Below, one piece after another: positions 17,550 to 61,725 of a DNA stretch of 64,000 bases (positions are counted from its first letter, which is position 1; each line of letters opens with the position of its first letter). The DNA lies in the IMG/VR virus record IMGVR_UViG_3300049001_000044, positions 248,001-312,000 of that record. One strand, given 5' to 3'. The notes under the pieces are model-generated. The model was not told where the DNA came from, did no database searches, and saw nothing but the letters and a program-made list of their open reading frames with translations. A program made the translations under genes and the position numbers.

Positions 17550-17563
17550 ACCATACCATACCA

Positions 17564-17569
17564 TAAATA
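17564..17569 (+). promoter_or_regulatory. T4-like late promoter core
   Basis: cataaata upstream of 17617. Confidence 0.6.
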
Positions 17570-17616
17570 TGCCATAGTTTTCATCCTGGCGAAATAACCA
17601 TATTAACGGAGAAATA

Positions 17617-18192
17617 ATGACTGCAGCCATCGTCAACACCCACGTTAAAGGACACGTCCTTGTGCAGGACGCTTCCACAGGCGAGGTGCTCCTCGACAAG
17701 TTCAATGCTGTCCACAACAAGAACATGGCCATCGCTTTGGCGCGTGGTCTTGCGAACGATGCCAACCACCAGATCTACAAGATCAAGCTGGGCAATGGTG
17801 GTTCATCGATCGACAGCATGAACCAAATCACCTACCAAGCTCCTAACGTTACGGGCAGTGGGGCCGATCTCTACAATCCGACTTATTCGGAAATCATCGA
17901 TGAAGCGCAGGCATCAACCCCTGCGGAGAACTCGGTGACGTATCAGGAAAGTCCGACGAACGATACTACGATCGTCATCTGCACCGCCACGATTGCATCT
18001 GGCGAACCAGCAGGTCAAGACGTTTCTGACTCGCCTCCGAACCCGAATCCTGAAGCTCAATTTGCGTTTGACGAACTTGGTCTGTTCTCAGCAGACAACC
18101 GTCTTCTCACGCACATTATCTTCTCCCCGATTCTGAAGACGCAAAACAGAGAACTGGTCATCACTTATACCCTGACGATTAGCGTTTCATAA
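17617..18192 (+). CDS. Putative baseplate/fibre-attachment structural protein
   Basis: 191 aa; FAFDELGLFS...LLTHIIFSPILK motif of the kind seen in fibre-attachment domains; late context. Confidence 0.6.
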   Translation: MTAAIVNTHVKGHVLVQDASTGEVLLDKFNAVHNKNMAIALARGLANDANHQIYKIKLGNGGSSIDSMNQITYQAPNVTGSGADLYNPTYSEIIDEAQASTPAENSVTYQESPTNDTTIVICTATIASGEPAGQDVSDSPPNPNPEAQFAFDELGLFSADNRLLTHIIFSPILKTQNRELVITYTLTISVS

Positions 18193-18220
18193 ACCCGTCA
18201 CTTTTCCATAGGAGGGAGAA

Positions 18221-19267
18221 GTGAAGGTCTCTTTTAGACAAGGTATAGTCCGTTGTAAGATGGTGCCTGCCTCGGGCGGTGCCACTTCAACACCAACATT
18301 GCTGTTCATCCAGCCAAGTTCTAAGGGTACGACCGTCGACCTGTTCGCTTCACAACAGGAACCGACGGTCGTGTCGTTTGCCCATTATGGCGCGAACTAT
18401 TTGGCTGAAGAAAGTAGAAACGTGACCTCAGCCTGGGGTGGTGGGGTCGAGGCTGTTATTGGCGCCTCGAAGGACATCAACAATAGTCCGCTCGACAAGT
18501 TTGGTATCCAATATCTGTATTGGGATATCGACTTGAGCACCGGCGCTGTGCGTAGAGGTTGGACAGATAAGGCTCTCATCGTATCGGCAACCGAGCCAGT
18601 GAATGCGCCCAACGATCAGCACTGGTTTGACCTAAGCAAGAACGTGATGAAAGTCCGCCGTGTGACTGGCGCAACAGCGCACTGGTTGGATAAGATTCGT
18701 GTCTTTGCTGGCACGTACACGGCGCAGGGAGCAATCGTTCCATTCGTACCAACAATCATAGGCTCGCAAGTAGGGATTTCCAAAGGCGAGTACTCTGCTG
18801 GTGCGATCCTTCTAGGTACGAACAATAAGCCGCTGCGCCAATCGGATGGCACTTTTGCCACCACCGAAACTGACCTCATCGTCCAACAGACGAGTGGTCA
18901 AAACGTTAAGTTTGATTCCGCTGTAGTCTTCGCACAAGCAAGCGAGGAGATTCCAAAGTTCTATTTGGTTTCGTTTAGTCCAGATCGTCGCATCAAGTTA
19001 GGCACGCACCTGAACAAGAATCAGTTCATTGCAGGAATTGTTGTTGATGACCTAAATGAAAACGAAACTGGCCAAGTCATTACGAATGGTGCTATTCGTA
19101 ATGAGCAATGGAACTGGCCAGAGTCTAGCTTTGGTAAGCCTCTCTTCTGCTCTGCTTCCGGCCATCTCACCCTTACACCACCCCAAGTAGGTGTGTCTCA
19201 GCAGGTGGGATTCGTTTATGACAAAGATGCCATCTATCTAAATCTATTTCCGCCAGTGAGGTTGTAG
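18221..19267 (+). CDS. Putative virion structural protein
   Basis: GTG start with SD ggaggg; 348 aa; within the structural operon. Confidence 0.6.
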   Translation: MKVSFRQGIVRCKMVPASGGATSTPTLLFIQPSSKGTTVDLFASQQEPTVVSFAHYGANYLAEESRNVTSAWGGGVEAVIGASKDINNSPLDKFGIQYLYWDIDLSTGAVRRGWTDKALIVSATEPVNAPNDQHWFDLSKNVMKVRRVTGATAHWLDKIRVFAGTYTAQGAIVPFVPTIIGSQVGISKGEYSAGAILLGTNNKPLRQSDGTFATTETDLIVQQTSGQNVKFDSAVVFAQASEEIPKFYLVSFSPDRRIKLGTHLNKNQFIAGIVVDDLNENETGQVITNGAIRNEQWNWPESSFGKPLFCSASGHLTLTPPQVGVSQQVGFVYDKDAIYLNLFPPVRL

Positions 19268-19268
19268 T

Positions 19269-20222
19269 ATGGCAGAATTAGTTTTGAAACCAATCTACCT
19301 AGATGACGAAGGTATCTTCGCTAGGTTGCCGGATGGTTCTATCGTTAACATTGGTGGTACGAACAGTCAGTATTTCACCGTCAACGGTAGAGGACTTGTA
19401 TTTGACGATGCTTCGTCTACAGCACCAGGTGGAACCGGTCTAACCCTTCAAAAGGTCTACGACGAAACGGTTCGCCATGGTGAGGCAACTATCAAGCTAC
19501 AAACGGGAAAAGATTTCTCGATCGTTGACGACAACGACAAGAACGTCTTCTTCCGCATTGACTCTGAAACCGGTAAGGTCACTTTGACAGGTGACTTGGA
19601 AGTTCTTGGTCAAAGCACCGTCATCAACACTGTCATTCAAGACAGTGACCACTGGGTTATCTCACCATCGACGGGCACGACGACTGCTCTCGTAATTGAG
19701 CCAGATCCAGGCGTCGTACCAATTGTCGACCTAGTAACAGTACGCAGAACTTACGGCACACCACCTGTATTCCGCATCGACAAGGATGGCAACCTCATCA
19801 CTACCGGTCTCTTTAATGGGATCGACATTGCGAAACTCAAGAGCGATCTTGACTCGCATATTGCTGGTACTTATGGACGCCACACGGCGTCTCAAGTTGA
19901 CATCCACCCCATTGAGGCCCTGCCGGGATCAACGGACGTTCAATCCGCAATTGAAGCTCTGTCTAATAAAGTGGAGAACGCGGGTGGTGGAAATACTGGT
20001 GGCGGTATCAGTGGCGTGCAGGGTTATGAGCACGTGCAAACCACGCCCGCAAAGATGTGGTTCATAACGCATGAAAAGAATACACGCCGTGCGACAGTGG
20101 CGTTGTACGATGATGATTGGCAACTGATCATTCCCGACCATGTAAAGATCATGGATCCGAACACGGTGGCGGTCATGTTCAGCGCAGCAATTAGCGGCAG
20201 AGGGATCCTAACTCTCTTCTAA
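19269..20222 (+). CDS. Putative fibre protein with C-terminal ~65-aa module
   Basis: DVQSAIEAL coil motif; C-terminal W.ITH...V.LYD...IIP..V...D.NTV.V.F module shared with downstream genes. Confidence 0.65.
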   Translation: MAELVLKPIYLDDEGIFARLPDGSIVNIGGTNSQYFTVNGRGLVFDDASSTAPGGTGLTLQKVYDETVRHGEATIKLQTGKDFSIVDDNDKNVFFRIDSETGKVTLTGDLEVLGQSTVINTVIQDSDHWVISPSTGTTTALVIEPDPGVVPIVDLVTVRRTYGTPPVFRIDKDGNLITTGLFNGIDIAKLKSDLDSHIAGTYGRHTASQVDIHPIEALPGSTDVQSAIEALSNKVENAGGGNTGGGISGVQGYEHVQTTPAKMWFITHEKNTRRATVALYDDDWQLIIPDHVKIMDPNTVAVMFSAAISGRGILTLF

Positions 20223-20236
20223 ATTTTGCGTCCTGA

Positions 20237-20244
20237 TATAAATA
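20237..20244 (+). promoter_or_regulatory. Perfect T4 late promoter TATAAATA
   Basis: tataaata in the intergenic gap before 20287. Confidence 0.75.
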
Positions 20245-20286
20245 GAACCTGTCAATCAACCAAGAAACATTTTAAGGAAGACGGCT

Positions 20287-20517
20287 ATGTCAAAGAAAAC
20301 TATTGAGACACAGGACATTGTTCTGGCAGCTACTCTCAAGGTGCTCGGATATCGTCTTGACCACATCGAGAAAGTTGGCAACAAAGGGATTTTCCACTTT
20401 GTAAACGTTGATGAAGAAGTGATCAATGACTACGATCTGGGGAACCTCAAGGTAGAGCCTGTGGCTTTCAATTCTGCGATCAAAGCACTGACCACCGCAT
20501 CTCGTAGAACGCTTTGA
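20287..20517 (+). CDS. Small conserved phage protein (DUF5659-like)
   Basis: TQDIVLAATL..GY.L...F.F...Y..G.L.VEP..F pattern; 76 aa. Confidence 0.55.
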   Translation: MSKKTIETQDIVLAATLKVLGYRLDHIEKVGNKGIFHFVNVDEEVINDYDLGNLKVEPVAFNSAIKALTTASRRTL

Positions 20518-20593
20518 TTCAAGATTTAGTAGTATCGTAGTACCTGTAGTAAAGTAGTAAGTTTGTTTCACGCCACTCACTTAGGAGCTTCAC

Positions 20594-22357
20594 ATGAGAC
20601 TTAATGGCAATCTCGTACTCAACTCGGACGCGTCTGGAGAAATTCAACACGCATATATCGAACGCCTGGCTGCGGCGCCTACGTTCGATGCTCTGCAGAA
20701 GGGTCGTATCTACTTCAATACTAATAGCTCGTTGTATTACTACAACGACGGCGCGGCTTGGGCACCGTTCGCAACTGGCGGCAATGCAGCAGCACTGCAG
20801 TCAGAAGTTGACGCTATCGAAGCATCGCTTGGCGGTCTGGTAAATGCTGACGGAACGTACGTTGCTGGCGCCCTCACCGGCTCCCTGGCAGGAACTGCTT
20901 CCCTTACCGACGCCATCCAAAAACTGCAAGCACTGGCTGATGCTAACGCATCCGCTATTTCGGCCGAAGTTGCTGACCGTCAGGCAGCAATCACCGCTGA
21001 AGAAACCGCTCGTACCGAAGCTGACACTGCAGAAGCTACTGCTCGTGCAGCAGCCGACCAGACGCTGACCGATAACCTCGCAGCAGAAGTCACCCGCGCA
21101 ACCGACGCTGAGGCAGCTCTTGGCACTCGCGTTGACGGCGTTGACGCTGACCTCACCGCAGAAGTAACCCGTGCTACTTCCGCTGAGGCTGCTCTTGGTA
21201 CCCGCGTTGACGGCGTTGCAGCTGATCTGGCGCAAGAAGTTACCGACCGCGAAACCGCAGACACCAATCTGCAGCTCGCAGTTGATGGTAAAGTCTCGAA
21301 AGCTGGCGACACCATGTCTGGCCAGCTTGCAATGGGCGGCAACAAGATCATCGGCGTGGGAGCTCCTACCCAAGCTGACGATGCAGTCAACAAGAACTAC
21401 GTTGATTCGCTGCTCTCCGGTCTGACCTGGGAAGCGCCAGTTGACGAAATCGTTGCTGACGCAACCGCAGTTGATCTGACTGGTAAAGCAGATGGCTACC
21501 GTATCGTCGACACCACCGCTAAGAAGATCTTCACCGTCGCTGGTGGCGCTCTTGACGCAGGTGAAGACCTGGTAGAAGGCGCAGCACTCTTCCACAAGGG
21601 TGACGAGCAAGGCTTCGTATTCAACGGCACTGATCTGGTCCAGTTCACTGGTACCGGTCAAATCGCTGCTGGTATCGGCCTGGTTAAAGTTGGTAACCAA
21701 CTTGACGTTAACCTCGGTGCAGGTATTGCACAGCTGCCAACCGACGAAGTCGGCGTCGACGTTCTCGGCACTGGTGGTCTGTTCCTCACCATCGACGGCG
21801 TAACTCCTTCGACCGATTCCGCTTCGCAGCTGTCTGTAAAGCTGGACGGCGATACCCTGACCCGCGGCGAAAACGGCCTGAAGGTTTCGAATGCTGTTAT
21901 CCAGTCCATCTCTGATGCAGCTGGCGCAGCAGCAACCGAACAGACCCGTGCAGAAGCGGCTGAAGGTGCTCTCGGTACTCGTATCGACGGCGTTGAAGGT
22001 GATCTGGCCCAGGAAGTTACCGATCGCACCGCAGCAGACACCGCTCTGGACGGTAAGATCGCAACCGAAACTTCGGATCGTCAAGCTGCTGACACCACCC
22101 TGCAGGGCAACATCGACGCAACCAATGTTCGCATTGGCAAGATGTACTTCTTGTACGAAGCAGGTGCTGCTGCAACGGTTCACACCGTTACTCACAACCT
22201 GGGTCAGAAGTACTGCAACGTGACCATCGTCGACGACACCGACAACGTGGTGATCCCACAGTCGATCGTGTTCGATTCGGATAACCAACTCACTGTGTCC
22301 TTCACCTCTGCTCTGCAGTGCAAGGCCATCGTGATGGGTCTGGCAGTTGTAGCCTAA
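20594..22357 (+). CDS. Long coiled-coil fibre/whisker protein
   Basis: Ala-rich AEVTRAT.AEAAL repeats, KVSKAGDTMSGQL and DAVNKNYVD fibre motifs, C-terminal THNLG module; SD aggag. Confidence 0.8.
   Translation: MRLNGNLVLNSDASGEIQHAYIERLAAAPTFDALQKGRIYFNTNSSLYYYNDGAAWAPFATGGNAAALQSEVDAIEASLGGLVNADGTYVAGALTGSLAGTASLTDAIQKLQALADANASAISAEVADRQAAITAEETARTEADTAEATARAAADQTLTDNLAAEVTRATDAEAALGTRVDGVDADLTAEVTRATSAEAALGTRVDGVAADLAQEVTDRETADTNLQLAVDGKVSKAGDTMSGQLAMGGNKIIGVGAPTQADDAVNKNYVDSLLSGLTWEAPVDEIVADATAVDLTGKADGYRIVDTTAKKIFTVAGGALDAGEDLVEGAALFHKGDEQGFVFNGTDLVQFTGTGQIAAGIGLVKVGNQLDVNLGAGIAQLPTDEVGVDVLGTGGLFLTIDGVTPSTDSASQLSVKLDGDTLTRGENGLKVSNAVIQSISDAAGAAATEQTRAEAAEGALGTRIDGVEGDLAQEVTDRTAADTALDGKIATETSDRQAADTTLQGNIDATNVRIGKMYFLYEAGAAATVHTVTHNLGQKYCNVTIVDDTDNVVIPQSIVFDSDNQLTVSFTSALQCKAIVMGLAVVA
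21083..21250 (+). repeat. Intragenic 75-nt (25-aa) tandem repeat
   Basis: Units start at 21083, 21158 and 21233 (AEVTRATDAEAALGTRVDGVDADLT); a further diverged copy near 21930-22050. Confidence 0.8.
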
Positions 22358-53038: not shown

Positions 53039-53665
53039 TCATAGACCCAAAGCTTCTTTGACGAGCATACGAACCACTGCGCAGGTCTCAAGCGTCTGGC
53101 TTGCATCTTGCAGTGCGTCATGTTGACCACGTTCGTTGAAGCCCATCGCCTCGAACAGGAGGTCTGACTTGAACAGGCCCATGGTGATAAAGCCCAGCGC
53201 TGAAGTGTCCAACACTACGTGGTGCATTTGGATCCATCCTTCGCTGTTGGTGGTGCGCTCTACACTGAACTCGATACCAACGGTCATCGTCAGCTGGTTG
53301 GTAAAGCGGCGGTCGAACTCAGGGTTGTGGCCCAAGAACATCACCTTGTTATCAGGACCCCAATATTTCAGGATTAGTTCGAGTAGGGCGCCTGCCGCTT
53401 CTTCCTGTGTGAAGCCATTCTCTTCCAGGTACTCACGGGTCAAACCATGGATCTTCTCTGCCTCAGGCGACCACTTGTACTTCGAGGCGTCGAACTTGAT
53501 ATCGATCTTCAGCTTCTCGACAGGGGAGAAGTCCTTCGTGCGGAACACGATGATACCAATCTGGATGCCTTGGTACTCAATCGATGAGTCCTTGCCCCAT
53601 GCTGCGCCCGACGTTTCCCAGTCAACACAGAGGCCGAATTCCGGGGTTACTTGCTTAGTAGCCAA
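53039..53665 (-). CDS. DEDDh 3'-5' exonuclease (DnaQ-like)
   Basis: VDWETSG, GHNPEFD, HDALQD; TTG start at 53665 with SD aggag. Confidence 0.88.
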   Translation of the reverse strand: MATKQVTPEFGLCVDWETSGAAWGKDSSIEYQGIQIGIIVFRTKDFSPVEKLKIDIKFDASKYKWSPEAEKIHGLTREYLEENGFTQEEAAGALLELILKYWGPDNKVMFLGHNPEFDRRFTNQLTMTVGIEFSVERTTNSEGWIQMHHVVLDTSALGFITMGLFKSDLLFEAMGFNERGQHDALQDASQTLETCAVVRMLVKEALGL

Positions 53666-53850
53666 ATTACTACTCCTAAAGTGTAGATGATTAGCATGTG
53701 ACTCGCGCATGTTGGGAGGCTGTTCATCCAGCGATAGGGTAATGGCTTCGTCGTGATGGCTTGACACAGTAGCGCAGGCCAGATCAATAAGACGGTGATG
53801 GCCATACCAATAGACCAGATGATGTTCCATCCAACGGCGCGAGTCAGCAT
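53647..53850 (-). CDS. Small membrane protein
   Basis: 67 aa, two hydrophobic segments; fills the gap. Confidence 0.5.
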   Translation of the reverse strand: MLTRAVGWNIIWSIGMAITVLLIWPALLCQAITTKPLPYRWMNSLPTCASHMLIIYTLGVVIWLLSK

Positions 53851-53851
53851 G

Positions 53852-54436
53852 TTAGTCTTGTTTCATACGTTCGATCACCTCAACGAGACGGTAGTCGATG
53901 TGAATGGATTCGATGATAGCGTGAGGAAGACCGCCACCCACAACGAAGTCTTCGACCTCCTTGGCGTGGAACTCTCTACTCGCTTCATCAGCTCTGTTCG
54001 CTTCCGCAACGAATGGGATTTCTTCGCGGATAGGAACGATCAGTTGGCGTCGATACATTGTGCCTGCCAGATAGCGGCACGTTGCTTTGTAAGCGGAGAG
54101 GCGGTCTTGATCAACCTTTCCACCTAGACGATTCGACCACAGCTTCGCATAGCCCCATAAATCTGCAGGGGTACGATCAACTAAGGTGACGATGCCACTT
54201 TTGGTAATTTGCAGATCGCGATCATACATTGCTTGCATGATCGCATCTTGCAGGGCCCACATATTTTCTTCGGACTCCTGCGCGTACTTCAGGGAGTCCC
54301 AACCCAACACCGCTTGCGCAGTGCGAGAGAGTTGGGTATCTACCACAGGGTACCCGGCAGCTTTCACGGCTTGTAGAATGGTGCTCTTTCCGGTACCATG
54401 GGTACCGCAGAGACCGACGACGGATAGTTCTGTCAT
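53852..54436 (-). CDS. P-loop kinase/ATPase (AAA_28, NadR/Ttd14-like)
   Basis: GTHGTGKST, LVDRTPAD. Confidence 0.8.
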   Translation of the reverse strand: MTELSVVGLCGTHGTGKSTILQAVKAAGYPVVDTQLSRTAQAVLGWDSLKYAQESEENMWALQDAIMQAMYDRDLQITKSGIVTLVDRTPADLWGYAKLWSNRLGGKVDQDRLSAYKATCRYLAGTMYRRQLIVPIREEIPFVAEANRADEASREFHAKEVEDFVVGGGLPHAIIESIHIDYRLVEVIERMKQD

Positions 54437-54912
54437 TTGCCCTCGTAATCTTTTGCTTCGGCGCAGTTCAAGCCATCCACATTCGGCCAGACATGAGTGA
54501 AGTCGCCGTCAGGAATGTTGGTGAGGAACCACGTCTTGTTGGATTTGATGTGATAGAAGGTTGGGCCCCTCAGGAAAAACCAACCATCCCAGTTGTCATC
54601 ATCGGTATCCTTCTTATCGAAGAGAATGAAGTAACCGTTGCGATCTTCGAGATAACAGATCTTCTGCGTCTTGTACTCACGGAAGAGAGCTGCATAGGCA
54701 TCATCCAACGTCAGCTCATCTTCCTTCGGCCCCAGCTCCTTGGCCTGCACTGCAGCTTCGACCTTCACCGTCTTCTCGCTGTAGCGACCATAGATGAGAG
54801 TGATGAGGATCAGGATCGAGACAATCACGATAGCTGCTGCCGCGAACATGTTTACATTCTTGTACCACGGCCGCTTGATCGGAGGTTCGTAGTTGGGGTT
54901 GTTGTAGCTCAT
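54433..54912 (-). CDS. Membrane-anchored hypothetical protein
   Basis: KRPWYK followed by a TM helix. Confidence 0.7.
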   Translation of the reverse strand: MSYNNPNYEPPIKRPWYKNVNMFAAAAIVIVSILILITLIYGRYSEKTVKVEAAVQAKELGPKEDELTLDDAYAALFREYKTQKICYLEDRNGYFILFDKKDTDDDNWDGWFFLRGPTFYHIKSNKTWFLTNIPDGDFTHVWPNVDGLNCAEAKDYEGK

Positions 54913-55517
54913 TTTGCCAGGTCTTTCGATTTGAGGAAGTCGACGAACTCAAACAGCTCGTCAGTTTCTTGGATGAGATACTTCGCGCCGGACGTCGGCT
55001 CAATCCACTCGTAACGTACCACGCCATTTTCGAACTTGCGACGCAGATTGAAGATGTAGTCAGGCAGAACGACCGCGACTGCAGTCATCAGACCGCCCAG
55101 TGAATCTTCATCTTCATGGAAGGGCGCGAAGGGGAATCCACTCTTCTCAGCCAACACCAGTGCCTTCTTGATGTCCACGTGACGGCCGCCGTTCAGCGTG
55201 ATGTAGGTTTTGTAGTTGTCGGCCCAGTCAGCAACCATTTCGGTGTGACGAGGTTCAACGGCTGCCATTGGGTGAACGTACTTGCGGATGATGTCCACAG
55301 ATGCGTGGCCGGTTTGGATGCCCTGCTGGATCGAGCTGAGGTAGAAGTTGACGAAGGCGTACAGACGCAGCTCAGGTTTGTACGTTGGTTCCGGACCGGC
55401 TTCGTCCTCTTCCTTGTCAAGGACGACGAAGCCGGCGTCTTCGAGAGCCTTGCGCAGTTCCGCAGGGGTTATCTCTTCCAGCTTCTTCATCGCGTATTCG
55501 AAAAATGCTTGATTCAT
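54909..55517 (-). CDS. Peptidyl-tRNA hydrolase type 2 (PTH2)-like protein
   Basis: YLSSIQQGIQTGHA, KTYITLNGG, FHEDEDSLGGLMTAVA; ATG 55517 with SD aaggag. Confidence 0.55.
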   Translation of the reverse strand: MNQAFFEYAMKKLEEITPAELRKALEDAGFVVLDKEEDEAGPEPTYKPELRLYAFVNFYLSSIQQGIQTGHASVDIIRKYVHPMAAVEPRHTEMVADWADNYKTYITLNGGRHVDIKKALVLAEKSGFPFAPFHEDEDSLGGLMTAVAVVLPDYIFNLRRKFENGVVRYEWIEPTSGAKYLIQETDELFEFVDFLKSKDLAK

Positions 55518-55525
55518 AGTTCTCC

Positions 55526-55684
55526 TTAGGGTGAGATTCGATGTTGTTTGTATTTGCGGAGGCCGCACGTCTGGCATTCCCGCTCTTGAATGAACGAGTA
55601 GCCTTTCACCGCGCCAGTGCGTGAGCTAATGATTTCAGTTTTGTGGATGGTGCTCCAGCGGCCCCAACTATGGAAGTGAAACAT
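55526..55684 (-). CDS. 52-aa zinc-ribbon-like protein (not in ORF track)
   Basis: MFHFHSWGRW...QERECQTCG; SD aaggagg. Confidence 0.65.
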   Translation of the reverse strand: MFHFHSWGRWSTIHKTEIISSRTGAVKGYSFIQERECQTCGLRKYKQHRISP

Positions 55685-55735: not shown

Positions 55736-57085
55736 CTACGTCCTGCCCACCAACATGTAGCGATCATATTGGATGAACGTCCTCGTACCCTCATACAGAA
55801 CTTCCGAAAGATTGAGTGCTTTACGGAGTTCATGTGAGTTGTTGACGCATGAGACGTGCCCCTCGCCTTGAAGGTAGTTGTTGTTCTGCACAATGATTAG
55901 CTTTCCAGCGGGAATCTTCTCACGCCATGCAGGGATATTTGGGATATGTTCTGACGAAGTGTTGATGATGACGTCAAACTGCGAGTAGTCAAGTTGGTAC
56001 ATGTCCATCGTCATCGTACCAAATCCTTCGTAGTCGTAATTGAGTTTTTCAGCGATACGATTGGCGCGCGGATCCAAGTCTATCGACGTCACCTTCAATG
56101 ACAGCTCCTTACAGTGGAGCATGAGAGTGAGGGTACCGATCCATCCACCAAGAATTGCAACTCTACTTCCCTTCTCCAACACGCCTTCATCTAACATCGA
56201 CTGAAGTCTCTCAGCCAACCACATCTTGCTGAGGATTTGCCCATCTGAAATTGCATCCCTAATCTCAGTCAATGGAAGATTTCCCAACACGTAGGGATCG
56301 TATAGCGCGCTAGCAATTCGGGTGGTGAAGAAGAATTCTTGTTTCATTGGATGGTCAGGTGCTGGAGTTGGATCTTTGATAGGATCAATGGTTGGGTCGG
56401 TCGAGGGAGCTTCGATCAAATCACCTAGCAGTTTAAGCATGAAGTCATGGTCATTGATGAACATGAGATCAGCATTTTTCTCTGCCTCCTTCACACCTAA
56501 TTCTGCGGCTTGCCTGATGATGTCGCTAAAGTCGCAAGGGATTGGATTCAACCATCTCTTCAATCGATCCTCGGCTTCCATTCTAACGAACTTCGGCTTA
56601 ATAGGATCCTGTGTTGTCCTCCACAACTTTGCTGCCTCCCTAAATGCGCCGCGGGCACTACGATAGTGATCGCTGTTGAAGTGAGTGGTGCAGACAGTTT
56701 GCGGGATAACCTTGATGTCCTTCGTCAGAGTCGTGGTGAAATCAAGCTGAGATTGGACGTTCTTAAAGAAGGCCTTGTTGAATAGCTTGACGCCACCGTA
56801 CCCATAACTAATGCCTAACGCAGGGTTCATCGCGTACCAGACATGGACATAGTTCTCATCACCCTCTTTAGGCTTGTAGGAGAAGTCGAAGGTGGGATGA
56901 ATAGTGGCGTCAGCATCGACCACGTAGAAGAACTTGGTGAGAGCTTTCTTCGAGGCGGCAATGTGAGCGTTGGCGATACCCTTTACTCCGTGGACACGGC
57001 GGGCATGAGGAAAGCGAGCCTTCAACGCAGCGAAGTTCTTGTCTGCGTTGGGCTCGTCGTATGAGATGAAGATGATGTCTAGCAT
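55736..57085 (-). CDS. Glycosyltransferase (GT-A/GT2-like) fused to a class I SAM methyltransferase
   Basis: N: DIIFISYDEP, RVHGVKG, YVVDAD (DxD), YGYGGVKL; C: AILGGWIG, SIDLD, IINTSSEH. Confidence 0.8.
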   Translation of the reverse strand: MLDIIFISYDEPNADKNFAALKARFPHARRVHGVKGIANAHIAASKKALTKFFYVVDADATIHPTFDFSYKPKEGDENYVHVWYAMNPALGISYGYGGVKLFNKAFFKNVQSQLDFTTTLTKDIKVIPQTVCTTHFNSDHYRSARGAFREAAKLWRTTQDPIKPKFVRMEAEDRLKRWLNPIPCDFSDIIRQAAELGVKEAEKNADLMFINDHDFMLKLLGDLIEAPSTDPTIDPIKDPTPAPDHPMKQEFFFTTRIASALYDPYVLGNLPLTEIRDAISDGQILSKMWLAERLQSMLDEGVLEKGSRVAILGGWIGTLTLMLHCKELSLKVTSIDLDPRANRIAEKLNYDYEGFGTMTMDMYQLDYSQFDVIINTSSEHIPNIPAWREKIPAGKLIIVQNNNYLQGEGHVSCVNNSHELRKALNLSEVLYEGTRTFIQYDRYMLVGRT

Positions 57086-57089
57086 GCCG

Positions 57090-57095
57090 TATTTA
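57090..57095 (-). promoter_or_regulatory. Late promoter core inside a hairpin, 4 nt from the ATG
   Basis: tgccgta-aa-tacggca-tg. Confidence 0.55.
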
Positions 57096-57107
57096 CGGCA
57101 CGTAGAA

Positions 57108-57353
57108 TCACGGTAGGAAGTAGATGTACTTGGAGTCGATGCTCGTGACGTTCGTGTCGGTCATCGACGCCTTGTTCTTCAGGACACGGCCATCAGTGGA
57201 ATCGGTCATGCGAGACAGCGTACGATCGACGAAGGCCTTTGGATAGCGACGGCCCAGCTGCGTCTCGACGATGTGATGGAGCTGATTGCTGTCAGAGCGG
57301 ACAGTGGTTTTCAGTGCGTTGATAATGATGGATGGAACAGTTTGCTTTGCCAT
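57108..57353 (-). CDS. Small protein, possibly winged-helix
   Basis: ATG 57353 with SD gaaagg. Confidence 0.6.
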   Translation of the reverse strand: MAKQTVPSIIINALKTTVRSDSNQLHHIVETQLGRRYPKAFVDRTLSRMTDSTDGRVLKNKASMTDTNVTSIDSKYIYFLP

Positions 57354-57387
57354 GGTGATACCTTTCATCGAAGTTAGTTAACGTAAA

Positions 57388-57480: not shown

Positions 57481-57912
57481 TTATTGCTGCTTCAACAGCT
57501 CGTCGATGATCTGCGAAGCCAGCTTACCGTCGAACTTGCCTGCGAAGTTGTCCTTCAGGTACTTCATGCAGGTACCTTTGTTCAGCTGCAGACCAGATGC
57601 AGCCAGCGCATCCATGATCTCCTGGCCATTCATTTGTTTCGGCAGATAGGCAGACAGAATCTTCTTCTCTTGCTCCATCGTCTCAGCACTGTCGTACGAC
57701 CTTTGAGCGTAGAGGATAGTGAGGGTGTCATCAACACCCTTGATGAATTTCTTGATGACTTGAATGACCTCTTGGTCGTTCGTCTCGCGGTTGCCGTCGT
57801 TTTTACCGATGGTTGCCGCCTCACCGATCAGGGTGGTGAGCAAAGTTGCTTCTGCCTTGTTGCCGTTCTTTCGTGCTTGCAGTTGGTCTGCTTTCAGTTG
57901 TTGCATCAACAT
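57481..57912 (-). CDS. yqeY: GatB/YqeY domain protein
   Basis: LKADQLQARK, EKKILSAYLPKQM, GKFDGKLAS. Confidence 0.85.
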   Translation of the reverse strand: MLMQQLKADQLQARKNGNKAEATLLTTLIGEAATIGKNDGNRETNDQEVIQVIKKFIKGVDDTLTILYAQRSYDSAETMEQEKKILSAYLPKQMNGQEIMDALAASGLQLNKGTCMKYLKDNFAGKFDGKLASQIIDELLKQQ

Positions 57913-57914
57913 GA

Positions 57915-59033
57915 TTAGTCCTTTTCTTTCAGTAGGAATTTGTTCGAGATGGTCTTGAAGGAGAACAGGCCGTCCATACGCTTGTAAACCAGACCTTCAC
58001 GGATTGGGTGAGTGATGGATGGACCTTCGGCTTTTGCCAGCAGGTCTTCGATGGTTGTGCCAGCTGGAATCTTAAACTCTTGTTCCAGGATAGGGACGTG
58101 CTTGAAGTTCTTACCCATCTGGAAGTTGTGAGTGATGATCTCAAACAGCTGCCACCTTGCTTCCGGCGCCATGTATTCCTGGCGATCGATGTCGAAGATG
58201 TCGAAGACGTGGAACTCGAAGTCCTTCAGATTCTCCCTGTTGCCTTGGATACCAGGACCCATCAGCTCGCCTTGAATTGCGATGTTGCGGCCCAGATTCT
58301 GCAGCATGTTCAGCACACCAGTGGTAGTGGCGGTCTTGATGAGGGTGTTGTCCTTGTTGTCCTCGTTTACCTTCAGTTCCAGGTTACGCGAGCAGACACC
58401 GACTTCACCGTTGAAGTGGTAGATGGTCAGCGACGAGCCATCCAGCTTCATCGTGACTTCGTACTCTGCTTCATTGTCGTTCACGACGTTCGGCATATTC
58501 TGAACGCGCTCTTGATCAGTCTTGCGAATGAACGACGGGAACATACCCTTCACTTGACCAACCAGCTGCGGCGGGATCGGCGGTTCCCACTTGACAACAC
58601 CCAGCAGTTCAGCGAAGTCTTGCTCGCGGATGGCAGTCAGATGTTCGCCAGCCTTGGCGACGACATCGTTCAGATCAGCGCACGTACCGAAGTCAGGGAT
58701 AGTGCTGATGATGTGCCGTGCGATCTCAGGGAACTTGCGCAGTGGGATCGAGAAGCCTTGGCTGACTTGACCACGCAGCTTGATGGTGCGCAGACGGTGG
58801 CCACGCTTGCCTTCGTACTCCCTCCCTGCCTTGTCGACCAGGTCTTGCCAACGTTCATCACCATCTGGCAGGAAGCTGTCGATCTCGAAGTAGACCGCGA
58901 AGTCACCTTGCTGGTAGTTGCCTTTCTGGCTTACGACGTTCCAGCCTTCAATGGTGATGCGCTCGATGCTGTCGGCACCTTCGATGGGATTTACCGCCGA
59001 CACTTGGCGGACTGTTACCAGTTTACGTGTCAT
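57915..59033 (-). CDS. RNA ligase, DRB0094 (Rnl2-like) family
   Basis: RKLVTV, N-terminal tRNA-binding OB-like domain, KLRGQVSQG, KTDQERVQN, TMKLDGSS, QGELMGPGIQGN, REGLVYK, SFKTISN. Confidence 0.9.
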   Translation of the reverse strand: MTRKLVTVRQVSAVNPIEGADSIERITIEGWNVVSQKGNYQQGDFAVYFEIDSFLPDGDERWQDLVDKAGREYEGKRGHRLRTIKLRGQVSQGFSIPLRKFPEIARHIISTIPDFGTCADLNDVVAKAGEHLTAIREQDFAELLGVVKWEPPIPPQLVGQVKGMFPSFIRKTDQERVQNMPNVVNDNEAEYEVTMKLDGSSLTIYHFNGEVGVCSRNLELKVNEDNKDNTLIKTATTTGVLNMLQNLGRNIAIQGELMGPGIQGNRENLKDFEFHVFDIFDIDRQEYMAPEARWQLFEIITHNFQMGKNFKHVPILEQEFKIPAGTTIEDLLAKAEGPSITHPIREGLVYKRMDGLFSFKTISNKFLLKEKD

Positions 59034-59043
59034 GTTGTTTTCC

Positions 59044-59196
59044 TTATTTGATTTCGATATCGTGGATGTCGCCACCCATGTCTTCAGCCAGAATGTGGAG
59101 AGACTCCTTCACCATCTCCATGTTCGCATGGTAGTTTTCGTCGGCGAAGAATTCTTCTGGCAAGCAATGGATGGTGACGTACAGTTTCAGTTCCAT
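59044..59196 (-). CDS. Small hypothetical protein (not in ORF track)
   Basis: 50 aa MELKLYVTIHCLPEEF...; TAATG-coupled. Confidence 0.55.
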   Translation of the reverse strand: MELKLYVTIHCLPEEFFADENYHANMEMVKESLHILAEDMGGDIHDIEIK

Positions 59197-59498
59197 TATT
59201 TGCTCCAGCTCTTCCAATCATGAGGACAGATGTCCTGCACTGGGCATTGATCGCAGTACCAGTCGTCGTGGTAGTAGTGCTCACCCTTCGCTTTGGCTTC
59301 TGCTTCATAGGTGAGAATGCAGCCCCATGGCTTGATGTTTTCGGGGTCACCCTTCCTACCACCCCAACCCCAGTCAACCGGCATTGTGTCGCAGATCTTG
59401 GTGCAGAGCTCTTGGAGCTTTTTCCCCTGCATGTCCAAGTGCAACTTCTGCTTTTCCTTCAGCGCATCGTACTCTTCTTGTGTGAGGATGTACTGCAC
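59196..59498 (-). CDS. Small Cys-rich hypothetical protein
   Basis: WGCI...YCDQCPV..IC motif. Confidence 0.7.
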   Translation of the reverse strand: MQYILTQEEYDALKEKQKLHLDMQGKKLQELCTKICDTMPVDWGWGGRKGDPENIKPWGCILTYEAEAKAKGEHYYHDDWYCDQCPVQDICPHDWKSWSK

Positions 59499-59801
59499 TT
59501 AATCACCTTGGAAGATGTAGTGAATGAGGTCAGCGATGATCTTGTGCGCTGCCTTGTTGTCATGCGGCCACGCTCGACCATCAGGGCATTTTTCGATGTC
59601 GCCAGGGACCACGCCATAGCGGACCAGGGGATCAAACACTTCATACTGCCACGAGCTGTTGCCGAACGGTCGCTTGCCGCTGAAGCCTTCTTCCTCATAC
59701 CACAGGGTGGTGAGGAGACGTTGGAGGTACTCACGGATGGTGAGCGTCTCGTTCAGATCATCACTGCGAAATTTCAACTCTGCGATGTCTCGTAGTTCCA
59801 T
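59499..59801 (-). CDS. Conserved hypothetical phage protein
   Basis: Probable start 59801; LW.EEEGFSGKRPFGNS.W motif. Confidence 0.7.
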   Translation of the reverse strand: MELRDIAELKFRSDDLNETLTIREYLQRLLTTLWYEEEGFSGKRPFGNSSWQYEVFDPLVRYGVVPGDIEKCPDGRAWPHDNKAAHKIIADLIHYIFQGD

Positions 59802-59953
59802 TATTTCCCCGTGAGCTTGGCAATGATCGCTAGTGGGATCATCAGAAATTGTTGAAAGAGAGTAGGTTTGCGGCGGTCGAAAGCGGTGATGAATGCGCTG
59901 CCACAACCCGCCACGAACCACAACAGTGCGAAGAAGAGAATCCAGCCTACCAT
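59801..59953 (-). CDS. Small membrane protein (not in ORF track)
   Basis: MVGWILFFALLWFVAG...; fills the gap. Confidence 0.5.
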   Translation of the reverse strand: MVGWILFFALLWFVAGCGSAFITAFDRRKPTLFQQFLMIPLAIIAKLTGK

Positions 59954-60198
59954 TAGAACACCACCGCGCAGAGCTTCAAACCTTCTTCCTTAGGATCGCG
60001 TTCGTAGTATTCCAGGTCTTGACCCGTCAAACACTCACGCGACTTCGGATCGTAGTAGTTGGCATGTTCTCCAGATGGGATGAATTCAACACCACGAACG
60101 TAGTGGTAGCCATTGCCTTCATCATCTTCTTGCATGACGAGCGGAATGCTGTCGTCAAGTTCTGCGAGGTCTCGTTTAAGATCACCGATCGTGTACAT
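59953..60198 (-). CDS. Small hypothetical protein
   Basis: D.EGNGY motif common in small phage proteins. Confidence 0.7.
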   Translation of the reverse strand: MYTIGDLKRDLAELDDSIPLVMQEDDEGNGYHYVRGVEFIPSGEHANYYDPKSRECLTGQDLEYYERDPKEEGLKLCAVVF

Positions 60199-60450
60199 TT
60201 AGGTTGCCTTGTTTTCGTAGGAGAAGTGGATGAAGCAGCCCGTGCCACCGCAACCACATTGGACGATGTTGTGGTTGTTGCCTTTCAGCTCCACTTCACC
60301 GCGGTTGATCTTGCTGTTTCGAATGGCTTCGTCCAGCTTGACGATCGCCATGTCATACAGTGTGTAGAAGCGCCGACCGTTTCCACGGCTCAGCTTGTTG
60401 CCAACGAGGCGTTTGATTGAACGCTTCGAATGCGGAATACGCTTACTCAT
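60199..60450 (-). CDS. Small basic protein
   Basis: 83 aa; QCGCG..GC. Confidence 0.6.
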   Translation of the reverse strand: MSKRIPHSKRSIKRLVGNKLSRGNGRRFYTLYDMAIVKLDEAIRNSKINRGEVELKGNNHNIVQCGCGGTGCFIHFSYENKAT

Positions 60451-60598
60451 CCTCTTCTCCTTTCCATTGACGATACTCGGCGAGAGCTTCCCAGTACCAT
60501 TCCCAGTTATCTACGCCACCATTGATAAGTGAATTCAACTTCGCCGAATCATCGAGGAGCTTTTCATACTCCTCTTTTGAAATAGTAACAGTTCCCAT
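60443..60598 (-). CDS. 51-aa protein resembling the gp5.9-type 'host RecBCD inhibitor' family (not in ORF track)
   Basis: MGTVTISKEEYEKLLDDSAKLNSLINGGVDNWEWYWEALAEY...; TAATG-coupled to the RNA ligase. Confidence 0.55.
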   Translation of the reverse strand: MGTVTISKEEYEKLLDDSAKLNSLINGGVDNWEWYWEALAEYRQWKGEEDE

Positions 60599-61725
60599 TA
60601 TTCTGCCTCTGCCGTGCTGTCCATTAACGCCAGTTGGCGCAATGTGTACTCTTGACGGAGGATGTTCCGCTCGAAGTACTCCTTGTAGGATGGCTGCTTT
60701 CCAGTGAAGGCTGCCATGATCAGGCCACGATGAGTGTGGTCCTTGTACTTGATCGCAAAGTCCTTCCGCTCCATCTCACCATCCACACGCAGTGCATCTT
60801 GAACGGTGTTGTGCAGATTGATGAGCTGACTTACTACGCGGTTCTCGATCTTCAAAATGTCTTCGATGTTTACACCATCGCCGACGAGCATGGACTTGAC
60901 ATCATCCAAGCCTTCGTCCAGCACAAGCTGAGCGATGTCACGCTCACGGAGGAAGGTCATTGCGCGGTGACGCTTCAAATACCAGTCGGTCTTGACCTTC
61001 ACCATTTCGCCGTTGTCGTACTGCGCAATCCAACCTTCGATGTTTTCGCTGGTCTTCGCTGCATCGAGCAGCATTTGGAGGGTGGCGAATTCAACATTGA
61101 ACTCTTCCACTACCTTTACCTTGAAGATCACGGCAGCTGCTCGCACTTCTTCCACTGGCCAGTACACACCAGTCCGGTTGTTGCGGATATGTAGCACCTG
61201 CAACTCTGCCTTCTTGTAAGGCAGAACGATGCGAGCGTCCGGAGCGGTGTATTCGAAGATCACGGTATGACCAGCCATCGCCATCTTTTCGGCGAAGATG
61301 AAGAAGGAGAAGTTCTCTGGCTCATTGATCCATGCAGTGGCTTGTCTTGCAACGTCCGAGTCAAACGACTTCTTCGACTTCAGAGCGAAAGTATAGCCAC
61401 CTTCATTCTCCACCTTCACAGTGTGGATCATCGAACCGTCACGCTTGTCCATCAAGCGAGTGATCTTGGACGGCAGATTTTCTGGACGAGTCTCTTCACG
61501 TTCGTTCACATTGAAGAACTTGTGCAGGGGGCGACCGACCACTTCGCCAGTCCGCTTGTCAAACACGATACCACGGCACTCACGTGACCACGCATCGTCA
61601 AAGGTTCCTTCAGCCGACACCATGTAGCAGAACGAGATTAGGTTGGGTGCAATCTCTGCTTCCCGAATCTCTTGCTTGCGCGCAACCTTGGAACGAAATT
61701 CATCGAGTGAGTTGATAGTTAGCAT
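60598..61725 (-). CDS. rnlA: RNA ligase 1 (T4 RnlA-like)
   Basis: ECRGIVF, RPLHKFFN, DKRDGSMI, FEYT, EGWI, VKVKTDWY. Confidence 0.9.
   Translation of the reverse strand: MLTINSLDEFRSKVARKQEIREAEIAPNLISFCYMVSAEGTFDDAWSRECRGIVFDKRTGEVVGRPLHKFFNVNEREETRPENLPSKITRLMDKRDGSMIHTVKVENEGGYTFALKSKKSFDSDVARQATAWINEPENFSFFIFAEKMAMAGHTVIFEYTAPDARIVLPYKKAELQVLHIRNNRTGVYWPVEEVRAAAVIFKVKVVEEFNVEFATLQMLLDAAKTSENIEGWIAQYDNGEMVKVKTDWYLKRHRAMTFLRERDIAQLVLDEGLDDVKSMLVGDGVNIEDILKIENRVVSQLINLHNTVQDALRVDGEMERKDFAIKYKDHTHRGLIMAAFTGKQPSYKEYFERNILRQEYTLRQLALMDSTAEAE

What the first reader, a model, noticed from the sequence alone, without database searches (positions are those of the whole stretch)
55736..57100. Late-expressed glycosyltransferase-methyltransferase fusion, probably on a leaderless mRNA
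Seen: a GT-A domain with DxD (VVDAD) joined by a Pro-rich linker (PSTDPTIDPIKDPTPAPDHP) to a SAM methyltransferase (LGGWIG). TAAATA lies only 4 nt from the ATG, there is no SD, and the promoter sits inside a hairpin. Inference: late timing fits modification of virion proteins (for example fibres decorated with a methylated sugar) or of the host surface better than replication-coupled DNA modification; one polypeptide would add and cap a glycan.
Basis: partly seen in the sequence, partly recalled or inferred. Interest (0 to 1): 0.6.

Follow-up and report, generated by a model that had tools for sequence, protein, structure and literature searches.

The report
Phage glycosyltransferase–methyltransferase fusion enzyme
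A giant soil phage encodes one protein that joins a sugar-adding domain to a methyl-adding domain. It belongs to a widespread, unnamed viral sugar-chain pathway, and its start codon sits in a conserved hairpin that carries a T4-style late promoter, so it is probably made only late in infection.

Summary
Window 55736-57085 (-) encodes a 449-aa protein. Residues 1-137 fold as a GT-A core with an invariant DxD. A disordered Pro-rich linker follows, then a class I SAM-methyltransferase fold with a conserved GGWIG motif. No Pfam, PHROG or NCBIfam model reaches threshold. The N-domain belongs to a virus-only family of about 2000 clusters.

The fused form is common in related 330-360 kb phages. In Ralstonia phage RsoM2USA and in marine phages the two halves are adjacent genes. 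There they end a conserved module with three more GT-A enzymes, next to tail-fibre or structural genes.

TAAATA is the most enriched upstream hexamer in this genome, precedes structural genes, and the phage has a T4 gp55 homolog. At this gene TAAATA lies in the loop of a hairpin (-19.3 kcal/mol, z -6.2) that buries the AUG. The arrangement recurs with compensatory changes in orthologs. This matches the T4 gene e / I-TevI device, here without an SD, so a leaderless late mRNA is plausible but unproven.

The acceptor is not identified. Virion glycan is favoured by association. DNA is less likely, because the genome has its own gp42-like/beta-GT pair and complete relatives lacking that pair keep the GT-MT pair.

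The parts
55736..57085 (-). ORF of 449 aa (P0001), the GT-A / linker / methyltransferase fusion. The stop codon is at 55736-55738.
   Evidence: Full-length orthologs at 50-72% identity in more than 90 clusters, several on 330-360 kb contigs.
56675..57085 (-). Residues 1-137: GT-A (nucleotide-diphospho-sugar transferase) core, beta1 IIFISY, DxD at D57-A-D59.
   Evidence: Models. Foldseek PDB hits RmlT, TarP, ppGalNAc-T, PBCV-1 A64R, WrtF and SunS. VIA Z 11.3 to B4GALNT1 and 10.8 to STIV A197. Viral GT hits including the Che8 GT. D57 and D59 invariant.
56411..56674 (-). Residues 138-225: helical sub-domain specific to this viral family, with conserved R149, E150, K153, R174 and W178.
   Evidence: Secondary structure. 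Conservation. Atlas and BFVD family members match the whole 1-225 at TM 0.85-0.88.
56348..56410 (-). Residues 226-246: Pro/Asp/Thr-rich linker with no predicted secondary structure.
   Evidence: pLDDT 69-77 and coil. It corresponds to the gene boundary (overlapping ATGA) between RsoM2USA ORF348 and ORF347.
55739..56347 (-). Residues 247-449: helical cap plus class I Rossmann methyltransferase fold. Motif I is GGWIG (313-317). D336 ends beta2. D371, N375, E379 and H380 lie at beta4.
   Evidence: Foldseek PDB hits at E 7e-10 and weaker: CalH, CurJ MT, TehB, NodS (TM by target up to 0.71), RebM. Conservation. Weak Pfam Methyltransf_25 and MTS hits below cut-off.
57090..57095 (-). TAAATA hexamer, 4 nt upstream of the ATG. 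Candidate T4-type late promoter core.
   Evidence: The same hexamer lies 4-5 nt before the ATG in six distinct ortholog loci (window included).
57072..57111 (-). Hairpin. The 5' arm covers the upstream gene's stop codon. The loop lies inside TAAATA. The 3' arm contains the AUG and codons 2-5. The conserved core stem is GCCG (57096-57099) paired with CGGC (57086-57089).
   Evidence: Fold -19.3 kcal/mol, z -6.15. Orthologs: ACCG/CGGT and GCGG/CCGC. Pair counts: 73.8% paired against 61.4% shuffled (1/500), and 2 pairs changed on both sides.
57108..57368 (-). Upstream 86-aa ORF on the same strand, 22 nt from the target. Source of possible read-through transcripts.
   Evidence: No family match. No sigma-70-like promoter or terminator between it and the target.

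Best explanation
The gene encodes a soluble bifunctional enzyme. The N-terminal domain is a metal-dependent (DxD) GT-A glycosyltransferase of a virus-specific family. It transfers a sugar from an NDP-sugar to a growing glycan. The C-terminal class I SAM-dependent methyltransferase then methylates that sugar. So one polypeptide performs the last 'add and cap' steps of a phage-encoded oligosaccharide pathway.

The rest of the pathway lies 18 kb away in this genome. It comprises two GT8-like transferases, a paralogous GT-A, a sugar-1-phosphate nucleotidyltransferase and a HAD hydrolase. In RsoM2USA and in marine T4-like phages it is contiguous with the unfused gene pair, next to tail-fibre or structural genes. 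The most likely acceptor is therefore a glycan on a virion (fibre or structural) protein.

Expression is confined to late infection by a T4 gene e / I-TevI-type device. Read-through transcripts fold a hairpin that buries the SD-less AUG. A gp55-type late promoter (TAAATA) sits in the hairpin loop. Transcripts started there lack the 5' arm and begin at or next to the AUG, so they are leaderless or nearly so.

Shown: the folds, the conserved motifs, the fusion/split relationship, the module, the motif statistics, and the hairpin with its conservation.
Inferred: donor, acceptor, methyl target, timing and transcript start.
For: Folds and motifs.

Fusion versus split: RsoM2USA ORF348 plus ORF347 overlap at ATGA. 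In a survey of 89 loci, 10 were fused, 9 split-adjacent, and 13 had the MT 0.4-2.2 kb downstream.

Conserved 8-gene module beside fibre or structural genes: RsoM2USA, L006, and marine L110/L111 with a Collar-domain fibre protein. Module members in this genome are GT8-like nucleotide-diphospho-sugar transferases, followed by NTP_transferase and HAD.

The C-domain relative in Pelagibacter phage Mosig lies in a sugar-modification cluster next to VrlC. XacN1, a relative of RsoM2USA, has at least two virion glycoproteins (PMC5852040), though XacN1 gave no tblastn match to this protein.

Promoter: TAAATA enrichment and orientation. It sits upstream of baseplate, neck, prohead protease, hub and scaffold/MCP genes, and upstream of the GT module itself. 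A gp55 homolog scores E 1.5e-8.

Hairpin. T4 precedent for a late promoter inside an inhibitory start-site hairpin: PMC3014915. No SD.
Against: - No family model reaches threshold, so donor, acceptor and even SAM use are unproven.
- VIA scores for sugar-nucleotidyltransferases (IspD, MobA, Z about 10) are close to those for GTs.
- In this genome and its closest relatives the gene sits among RNA-ligase, YqeY, PTH2-like, kinase, exonuclease and DNA-polymerase genes, not virion genes.
- The genome makes hmC and has a beta-GT. Phage GT-A enzymes are known to extend DNA glycans (bioRxiv 10.1101/2023.12.21.572611).
- TAAATA also precedes non-structural genes, so 'late' is by analogy only.
- With the T4 rule (hexamer end at -6, my recollection, not checked here), the 4-nt spacer predicts a start on the U of AUG.
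- Orthologs L113 and L097 lack the motif, and L008 has it 44 nt upstream of a GTG start.
- No RNA data exist for this phage.
Confidence: 0.45

Rival explanations
1. DNA hypermodification. The enzyme extends the glucosyl-5-hydroxymethylcytosine made by the phage's gp42-like/beta-GT pair with a second sugar, and methylates it, late in infection before packaging.
For: - gp42-like dCMP hydroxymethylase with Asp at the ThyA N177 position.
- T4 beta-GT family protein.
- The same pair occurs in the close relative G003 and in RsoM2USA.
- The gene sits in a replication / nucleic-acid block.
- GT-A enzymes resembling TarP, JGT and PBCV-1 A64R are known DNA glycan transferases.
- Multi-GT clusters with NDP-sugar genes make polyglycosylated cytosines (PMC13326640).
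Against: - Two complete or near-complete jumbo genomes carry the N-domain family but have no gp42-like gene and no beta-GT. G002 (100% complete) has the MT 1.8 kb away and only a canonical ThyA. G001 (98% complete) has no ThyA homolog at all.
- The module sits next to tail-fibre genes in marine phages and in L006.
- The R...DDD...EDY/F motifs of the JGT-like DNA GT-A enzymes are not seen among the conserved positions of this family.
- I know of no methylated DNA-linked sugar (from memory, not searched).
Confidence: 0.15
2. The sugar acceptor is neither virion protein nor DNA. The pathway might modify host envelope glycans (LPS, capsule, for example for superinfection exclusion) or make a soluble methylated glycoside or NDP-sugar derivative.
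For: - A cellular relative of the C-domain lies among GT1 and GT28 genes.
- Structural matches include wall-teichoic-acid and LPS transferases such as TarP, RmlT, ArnC and WrtF.
- The marine module is followed by at least 8 radical-SAM genes, which suggests elaborate small-molecule or peptide chemistry.
Against: - No membrane-associated (hydrophobic) segment was noticed in the sequence or model, though this was not formally tested.
- The family is almost exclusively viral.
- The phage is of a lytic T4-like jumbo type, where late envelope remodelling has little obvious use.
- The module repeatedly adjoins fibre or structural genes.
Confidence: 0.15
3. Regulatory rival. The TAAATA at this gene is not a working promoter. 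The conserved hairpin acts only at RNA level, as a translational attenuator, processing site or stabiliser on a polycistronic mRNA. The gene is then translated from read-through transcripts, not from a leaderless mRNA.
For: - The target lies 22 nt from the upstream gene with no terminator between them.
- The 4-nt spacer is short for a T4-type start.
- L113 and L097 orthologs lack the motif and abut or overlap the upstream gene.
- TAAATA is partly self-pairing and closes the stem.
Against: - The loop is exactly TAAATA in five hairpin-bearing orthologs whose stems differ.
- L112 keeps TAAATA at the same 4-nt distance although its stem is lost.
- The flanks fit the genome-wide site consensus, with C-A-T at +4 to +6.
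- L008 keeps a TAAATA upstream.
- A buried, SD-less AUG would be almost untranslatable from read-through RNA.
Confidence: 0.3
4. The N-domain is not a glycosyltransferase. It is instead a nucleotidyl- or phospho-sugar transferase of the same fold (IspD/MobA/GlmU-like or LicD-like).
For: VIA Z of 9-10.5 for IspD, MobA, cytidylyltransferases and related enzymes, close to the GT scores.
Against: - The Gly-rich GxGxR loop that follows beta1 in nucleotidyltransferases is absent.
- A hydrophobic strand followed by an invariant DxD is the GT-A signature.
- Foldseek hits below E 1e-3 are essentially all glycosyltransferases.
- Relatives give weak Glycos_transf_2 hits.
Confidence: 0.08
5. RNA or tRNA modification, suggested by conserved synteny with two RNA ligases, YqeY, a PTH2-like hydrolase, a P-loop kinase and an RNase T-like exonuclease.
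For: The synteny is conserved in four relatives.
Against: The synteny is limited to one closely related clade. In more distant phages the gene pair lies in the glycan module. No RNA-binding domain is present.
Confidence: 0.03

Closest known systems
Chlorovirus PBCV-1 A064R (multidomain capsid-glycan enzyme: two rhamnosyltransferase domains plus a methyltransferase domain)
   Same: A virus-encoded, soluble polypeptide that joins a GT-A domain with DxD to a SAM methyltransferase. The literature found deals with its transferase and methyltransferase activities (titles and abstracts only were seen). That the MT caps the sugar just added is my recollection. A64R domain 1 (2p6w) is among the structural matches of the N-domain (Foldseek E 3e-4, VIA Z 8.9).
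   Different: No detectable sequence relationship. This protein has one GT domain rather than two, the host is bacterial rather than algal, the helical sub-domain differs, and the acceptor is unknown.
Ralstonia phage RsoM2USA ORF348 + ORF347 (annotated as hypothetical proteins)
   Same: Orthologous halves: about 37% identity over 92% of the query, E 1e-57. Same order, and the start and stop codons overlap at ATGA.
   Different: They are two genes rather than one. They lie inside the 8-gene GT module close to structural genes. There is no TAAATA hairpin at the start.
T4 genes e, soc, 49 and I-TevI: inhibitory start-site hairpin with a late promoter in its 5' part
   Same: The start site is sequestered in a helix on long transcripts. 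A T4-type late promoter is placed so that late transcripts lack the 5' arm (PMC3014915). This phage has a gp55 homolog and an ATAAATA-like late motif.
   Different: Here there is no Shine-Dalgarno sequence and only 4-5 nt between motif and AUG, so the late mRNA would be leaderless or nearly so. The motif occupies the loop itself. None of this has been tested experimentally.
Phage virion glycosylation systems (mycobacteriophage Che8-type GTs; glycoproteins of jumbo phage XacN1)
   Same: Phage-encoded GT-A enzymes. The Che8 GT Q855A2 is a structural match (E 1.4e-4). Glycoproteins were detected in XacN1 virions (PMC5852040). That Che8-type GTs are linked to glycosylated structural proteins is my recollection.
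   Different: A different GT family, no shared gene cluster, and no biochemical data for this family. XacN1 itself gave no tblastn match to this protein.
Phage GT-A DNA glycosyltransferases associated with 5mYOX/ThyS (JGT/TarP-like)
   Same: GT-A fold. TarP and RmlT are top PDB matches for both. They are viral and often lie near replication genes.
   Different: Their R...DDD...EDY/F motifs are not seen among the conserved positions of this family. This family also occurs in complete genomes without any hydroxymethylase or beta-GT.

Membership tests
GT-A fold glycosyltransferases (GT2-like) | Single Rossmann-like alpha/beta/alpha nucleotide-sugar binding domain | tested here: met
   Model pLDDT 91.5. 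Foldseek prob about 1 to RmlT, TarP, ppGalNAc-T, A64R and SunS. VIA Z 11.3/10.8 over residues 1-137 with rmsd 2.7-3.2.
GT-A fold glycosyltransferases (GT2-like) | DxD metal/NDP-binding motif at the end of a hydrophobic beta strand | tested here: met
   FFYVVD57-A-D59 follows strand 52-57. D57 and D59 are invariant in 60/60 homologs. That they align in space with the DxD of solved GTs was not checked residue by residue.
GT-A fold glycosyltransferases (GT2-like) | Match to a curated GT family model (Pfam Glycos_transf_2 or similar) | tested here: not met
   No GT model matches at E <= 1 in Pfam, PHROGs or NCBIfam. Only sub-threshold PF00535 hits appear in two multidomain relatives. A profile against PDB sequences gave only spurious hits.
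GT-A fold glycosyltransferases (GT2-like) | NDP-sugar-dependent sugar transfer to an acceptor | not testable with these tools
   Needs an enzyme assay.
Class I SAM-dependent methyltransferases | Seven-stranded Rossmann-like MT fold | tested here: met
   Foldseek E 7e-10 to 9e-8, prob 1.0. TM by target 0.6-0.71 to NodS, TehB and an M. acetivorans MT. Strand order is given.
Class I SAM-dependent methyltransferases | Gly-rich motif I and an acidic residue at the end of beta2 that binds the SAM ribose | tested here: inconclusive
   Motif I is the variant G-G-W-I-G (G313, W315, G317 conserved). D336 at the end of beta2 is invariant and D361 is mostly conserved. The Trp in place of the central Gly is unusual.
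Class I SAM-dependent methyltransferases | Match to a curated MT family model | tested here: not met
   Methyltransf_25 scores 15 bits (cut-off 27) and MTS 13.6 bits (cut-off 23).
T4-type late promoter with inhibitory start-site hairpin (gene e / I-TevI type) | gp55-type late sigma factor and a TATAAATA-like motif enriched upstream of late genes | tested here: met
   gp55 homolog at E 1.5e-8. (C/G)ATAAATA and GTAAATA are 10-13 fold enriched upstream. The motif lies upstream of baseplate, neck, protease, hub and scaffold/MCP genes.
T4-type late promoter with inhibitory start-site hairpin (gene e / I-TevI type) | Start codon sequestered in a stable, conserved helix, with the promoter placed so that late transcripts lack the 5' arm | tested here: met
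   Fold -19.3 kcal/mol, z -6.15. Five orthologs have the hairpin, with compensatory changes.
T4-type late promoter with inhibitory start-site hairpin (gene e / I-TevI type) | Mapped late transcript 5' end inside the hairpin, and late-only translation | not testable with these tools
   No RNA run holds this phage.
Leaderless mRNA | Primary transcript beginning at the A of the AUG | not testable with these tools
   Only indirect evidence. There is no SD. The motif lies 4 nt (window, L088, L089, L112) or 5 nt (L090, L098) from the ATG. The A falls at the +5 position, where the site consensus favours C-A-T.

The most novel reading that the evidence does not exclude
The fusion is the terminal enzyme of a previously undescribed, widespread phage glycan-assembly module. 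The module comprises two GT8-like and two GT-A transferases of a virus-only family, a methyltransferase, and with or without radical-SAM enzymes. It is shared by marine T4-like phages and soil jumbo phages. On this reading it decorates tail fibres or other virion proteins with a methyl-capped oligosaccharide. In this clade it would be switched on strictly late by a hairpin-embedded late promoter that yields a leaderless mRNA.
Probability: 0.3. Interest if true: 0.7.

Novelty: new variant of a known kind. Interest (0 to 1): 0.45.

Why it matters
Virion glycosylation is barely studied in phages of Gram-negative bacteria. It could affect host recognition, environmental stability and immune visibility of therapeutic or biocontrol phages.

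This work gives a fold-level function and a pathway context to a virus-only family of about 2000 protein clusters that no Pfam, PHROG or NCBIfam model recognised. It does so through a Rosetta-stone fusion. It also points to a cultured handle, Ralstonia phage RsoM2USA ORF347-354, for testing.

The start-site hairpin with a late promoter in its loop extends a classic T4 control device to jumbo phages. It does so in an SD-less, possibly leaderless form.

Tried and rejected
- Pfam, PHROGs and NCBIfam on the whole protein gave nothing above threshold.
- A profile of the N-domain family against PDB sequences gave only spurious ROR-gamma hits at E about 0.4.
- Foldseek with the full-length model was swamped by methyltransferases. 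The N-domain therefore had to be folded alone.
- megablast of the locus against cultured phages found no match.
- The degenerate DNA pattern scan of metagenome contigs returned only 8 loci.
- One ortholog contig had no retrievable DNA.
- The look-up of sequencing runs found only the probable source soil metagenome and no RNA run. Read laying was therefore not used, and no transcript start could be read.
- I tested whether TAAATA sites in general sit in hairpins. They do not: 18 of 106 have a flanking stem of 4 bp or more, against 15.7 +/- 3.4 in flank-swapped controls. The hairpin is specific to a subset of sites.
- The sigma-70 promoter and terminator scan around the gene was at chance level.
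- T4 alpha-glucosyltransferase family (PF11440): no hit in the genome.
- Not run, because not needed for the conclusions: complex prediction and the large representative-protein search.
Full report
**Where the window comes from.** The window is bases 248001-312000 of a 343,229-bp virus record with direct terminal repeats. It is rated 100% complete and comes from a soil metagenome. The nearest cultured relative is the jumbo myovirus Ralstonia phage RsoM2USA. That phage belongs with XacN1 to a group distantly related to Rak2-like phages, and no phage RNA polymerase is annotated in it (PMC8504454).

**The observation.** Pfam, PHROGs and NCBIfam give nothing above threshold, only weak methyltransferase hits. 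A model built on 80 homologs has mean pLDDT 94.7, and only the Pro-rich linker (about residues 226-246) has low confidence.

- C-terminal half: it matches class I SAM methyltransferases (E 7e-10 and weaker, TM by target up to 0.71).
- N-terminal domain folded alone (pLDDT 91.5): it matches GT-A glycosyltransferases in the PDB. Foldseek finds RmlT, TarP, ppGalNAc-T, PBCV-1 A64R, WrtF and SunS at E 6e-5 to 1e-3. VIA finds B4GALNT1 at Z 11.3 and STIV A197 at Z 10.8 over residues 1-137. Viral GTs including the Che8 enzyme also match.
- Same-fold nucleotidyltransferases score nearly as well (Z about 10). However, the Gly-rich loop of those enzymes is absent, while a hydrophobic strand followed by an invariant D57-x-D59 is present.
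- In the C-domain, G313/W315/G317 (GGWIG), D336, D371, N375, E379 and H380 are conserved.

So the domain reading is confirmed at fold and motif level, but not at curated-family level.

**The family.**
- The N-domain belongs to a family of about 1972 clusters with no Pfam domain. It is almost exclusively viral.
- Some members carry one or two degenerate N-terminal copies of the domain.
- Stand-alone C-domain relatives are few (26).
- The fused architecture of about 445 aa occurs in more than 90 clusters at 50-72% identity, several on contigs of 330-360 kb.
- In RsoM2USA the halves are ORF348 and ORF347, with overlapping stop and start codons.
- In 89 loci carrying the N-domain, 10 are fused and 9 split-adjacent. 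In 13 the MT lies 0.4-2.2 kb downstream, in 41 there is no MT within at least 1.5 kb, and 16 are undetermined.

This recurrent linkage is a Rosetta-stone argument that the two activities act in one pathway.

**Pathway context.** In RsoM2USA (ORF354-347), in soil contig L006 and in abundant marine contigs (L110/L111) the pair ends a conserved module. The gene sizes, in order, are:
- about 120 aa
- about 285 aa
- about 275 aa
- about 185 aa
- about 310 aa (a paralog of the N-domain)
- about 460 aa (faint radical-SAM signal)
- the GT-A gene
- the MT gene

The module lies next to a Collar-domain fibre protein (marine contigs), a Gly-rich protein (L006), or the structural block (RsoM2USA).

In this genome the module's remnant lies at about 322.8-326.6 kb, outside the window. 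Its members are:
- Two roughly 290-aa proteins that look like GT8/Mannosyl_trans3-type nucleotide-diphospho-sugar transferases.
- A 307-aa paralog of the N-domain.
- Downstream, an NTP_transferase and a HAD hydrolase.

The 349 (radical-SAM-like) gene was not found. The GT-MT pair has been fused and moved 18 kb into a block of RNA ligases, YqeY, a PTH2-like hydrolase, a P-loop kinase, an RNase T-like exonuclease and DNA polymerase B. That position is conserved in close relatives.

A C-domain relative in Pelagibacter phage Mosig sits among an aminotransferase, a carbamoyltransferase and an epimerase, beside VrlC. A cellular relative sits among GT1 and GT28 genes.

Together this supports 'add a sugar and methylate it' as the last steps of a multi-GT glycan pathway.

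**Acceptor.** The evidence here is by association only.
- For a virion protein glycan: the module repeatedly adjoins fibre or structural genes. The related jumbo phage XacN1 has at least two virion glycoproteins (PMC5852040), although XacN1 itself gave no tblastn match to this protein.
- For DNA: the genome has a second ThyA homolog that aligns with T4 gp42 and carries Asp at the ThyA-N177 position. It also has a 379-aa T4 beta-glucosyltransferase family protein 6 kb away from it. Phage GT-A enzymes can extend DNA glycans, and multi-GT clusters make polyglycosylated cytosines (PMC13326640).
- Against DNA: the hmC system already has its own GT. Two complete or near-complete jumbo genomes carry the N-domain family, one with the MT nearby. 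Both lack any gp42-like gene or beta-GT. One has only a canonical ThyA and the other has none.

I therefore rank virion glycan first, and DNA and other acceptors lower.

**Regulation: the motif.**
- TAAATA occurs 106 times in the genome, counting both strands.
- It lies within 80 nt upstream of 68 of 498 crude gene calls, against 5.8 expected. It is the most enriched hexamer.
- Within 70 nt upstream the sense orientation occurs 65 times and the antisense 10 times.
- The modal distance to the ATG is 25-29 nt.
- A (64%) or G precedes it and T almost never does. A weak C-A-T consensus lies at +4 to +6.
- It precedes baseplate wedge, hub, neck, prohead protease and scaffold/MCP genes, and also the GT module itself.
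- The phage has a T4 gp55 homolog (E 1.5e-8).

This makes it a credible T4-type late promoter (T4: TATAAATA). It also precedes non-structural genes, and timing is untested.

**Regulation: this gene.**
- TAAATA lies 4 nt from an AUG that has no SD (best anti-SD duplex -1.7 kcal/mol).
- It forms the loop of a hairpin whose 3' arm contains the AUG and the next four codons (-19.3 kcal/mol, z -6.15).
- Orthologs keep the design with different stems. The window has GCCG/CGGC, L088 and L089 have ACCG/CGGT, and L090 and L098 have GCGG/CCGC with a 5-nt spacer.
- L112 keeps TAAATA at 4 nt but has lost the stem. L008 has TAAATA 44 nt upstream of a GTG start. L113 and L097 have neither feature.
- On six sequences, 73.8% of cells pair against 61.4% in shuffles (1/500), and two pairs change on both sides.

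This is the logic described for T4 genes e, soc, 49 and I-TevI. There, long transcripts hide the start site in a helix, and a late promoter within the structure gives transcripts that cannot form it (PMC3014915). Here there is no SD and almost no spacer, so the late mRNA would be leaderless or nearly so. The 5-nt spacer fits the T4 start rule as I recall it (hexamer ending at -6). The 4-nt spacer would need a start one base closer. No RNA data exist for this phage.

**Verdict.**
- Solid: the enzyme type, the fusion logic, the motif and the hairpin.
- Plausible: late timing and a leaderless start.
- Favoured only by association: the virion-glycan acceptor, with a DNA-glycan rival made more concrete by the hmC/beta-GT genes.

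Relative to known systems this is a new variant. The enzyme is an independent bacterial-virus analogue of chlorovirus A064R, built from an unannotated viral GT-A family. Its control is a T4 gene-e-type device in SD-less form.

Noticed in passing
own genome outside the window: G000:C1:27723-28475 (-) and 20911-22050 (-): A gp42-like dCMP hydroxymethylase (Asp at the E. coli ThyA N177 position, T4-like motifs) and a T4 beta-glucosyltransferase family protein lie 6 kb apart. The phage DNA is probably glucosyl-hydroxymethylcytosine. The same pair occurs in relative G003 and in RsoM2USA.
   Followed up: partly
own genome G000:C1:~107380-107440 (-), gene 106463-107413: A second site with the same design: TAAATA, then 5 nt, then the ATG, with a 10-bp flanking stem that includes the ATG. 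It precedes a 316-aa gene that has a weak tRNA_Me_trans HUP-domain hit. G000 171190 (-) may be similar, with a GCGAT/ATCGC stem ending at the ATG.
   Followed up: partly
own genome G000:C1:322800-326700 (L102 4808-8622): Remnant of the conserved GT module. It holds a 127-aa gene, two GT8-like genes of about 290 aa, a 209-aa gene and a 307-aa paralog of the N-domain. An NTP_transferase and a HAD hydrolase follow. A TAAATA lies 61 nt upstream of the first gene.
   Followed up: partly
window 57481-61725 (-) and 53039-55577 (-): A block with RNA-repair flavour: a T4 Rnl1-like ligase, a PHA02142/Rnl-type ligase, YqeY, a PTH2-like hydrolase (phrog_3668), an AAA_28 P-loop kinase and an RNase T-like exonuclease. 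The block is syntenic in relatives.
   Followed up: no
whole genome: TACAATA is also enriched upstream of genes (15 observed against 1.8 expected). It may be the -10 element of a second, sigma-70-like promoter class.
   Followed up: no
L110/L111 (marine contigs) 11900-20681: The marine version of the module is followed by at least eight consecutive radical-SAM (some SPASM) genes. This hints at far more elaborate chemistry than in the soil jumbo phages.
   Followed up: no
homologs P0007, P0010, P0243, P0254 and others: Family members of about 350, 500 and 720 aa carry one to four degenerate, truncated copies of the GT-A domain ahead of the intact copy. The extra copies often lack the DxD.
   Followed up: partly
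own genome G000:C1:242289-242591 (-): A homolog of the T4 late sigma factor gp55 (38% identity over residues 4-116) inside a 316-aa open frame. That is longer than T4 gp55 (185 aa).
   Followed up: no
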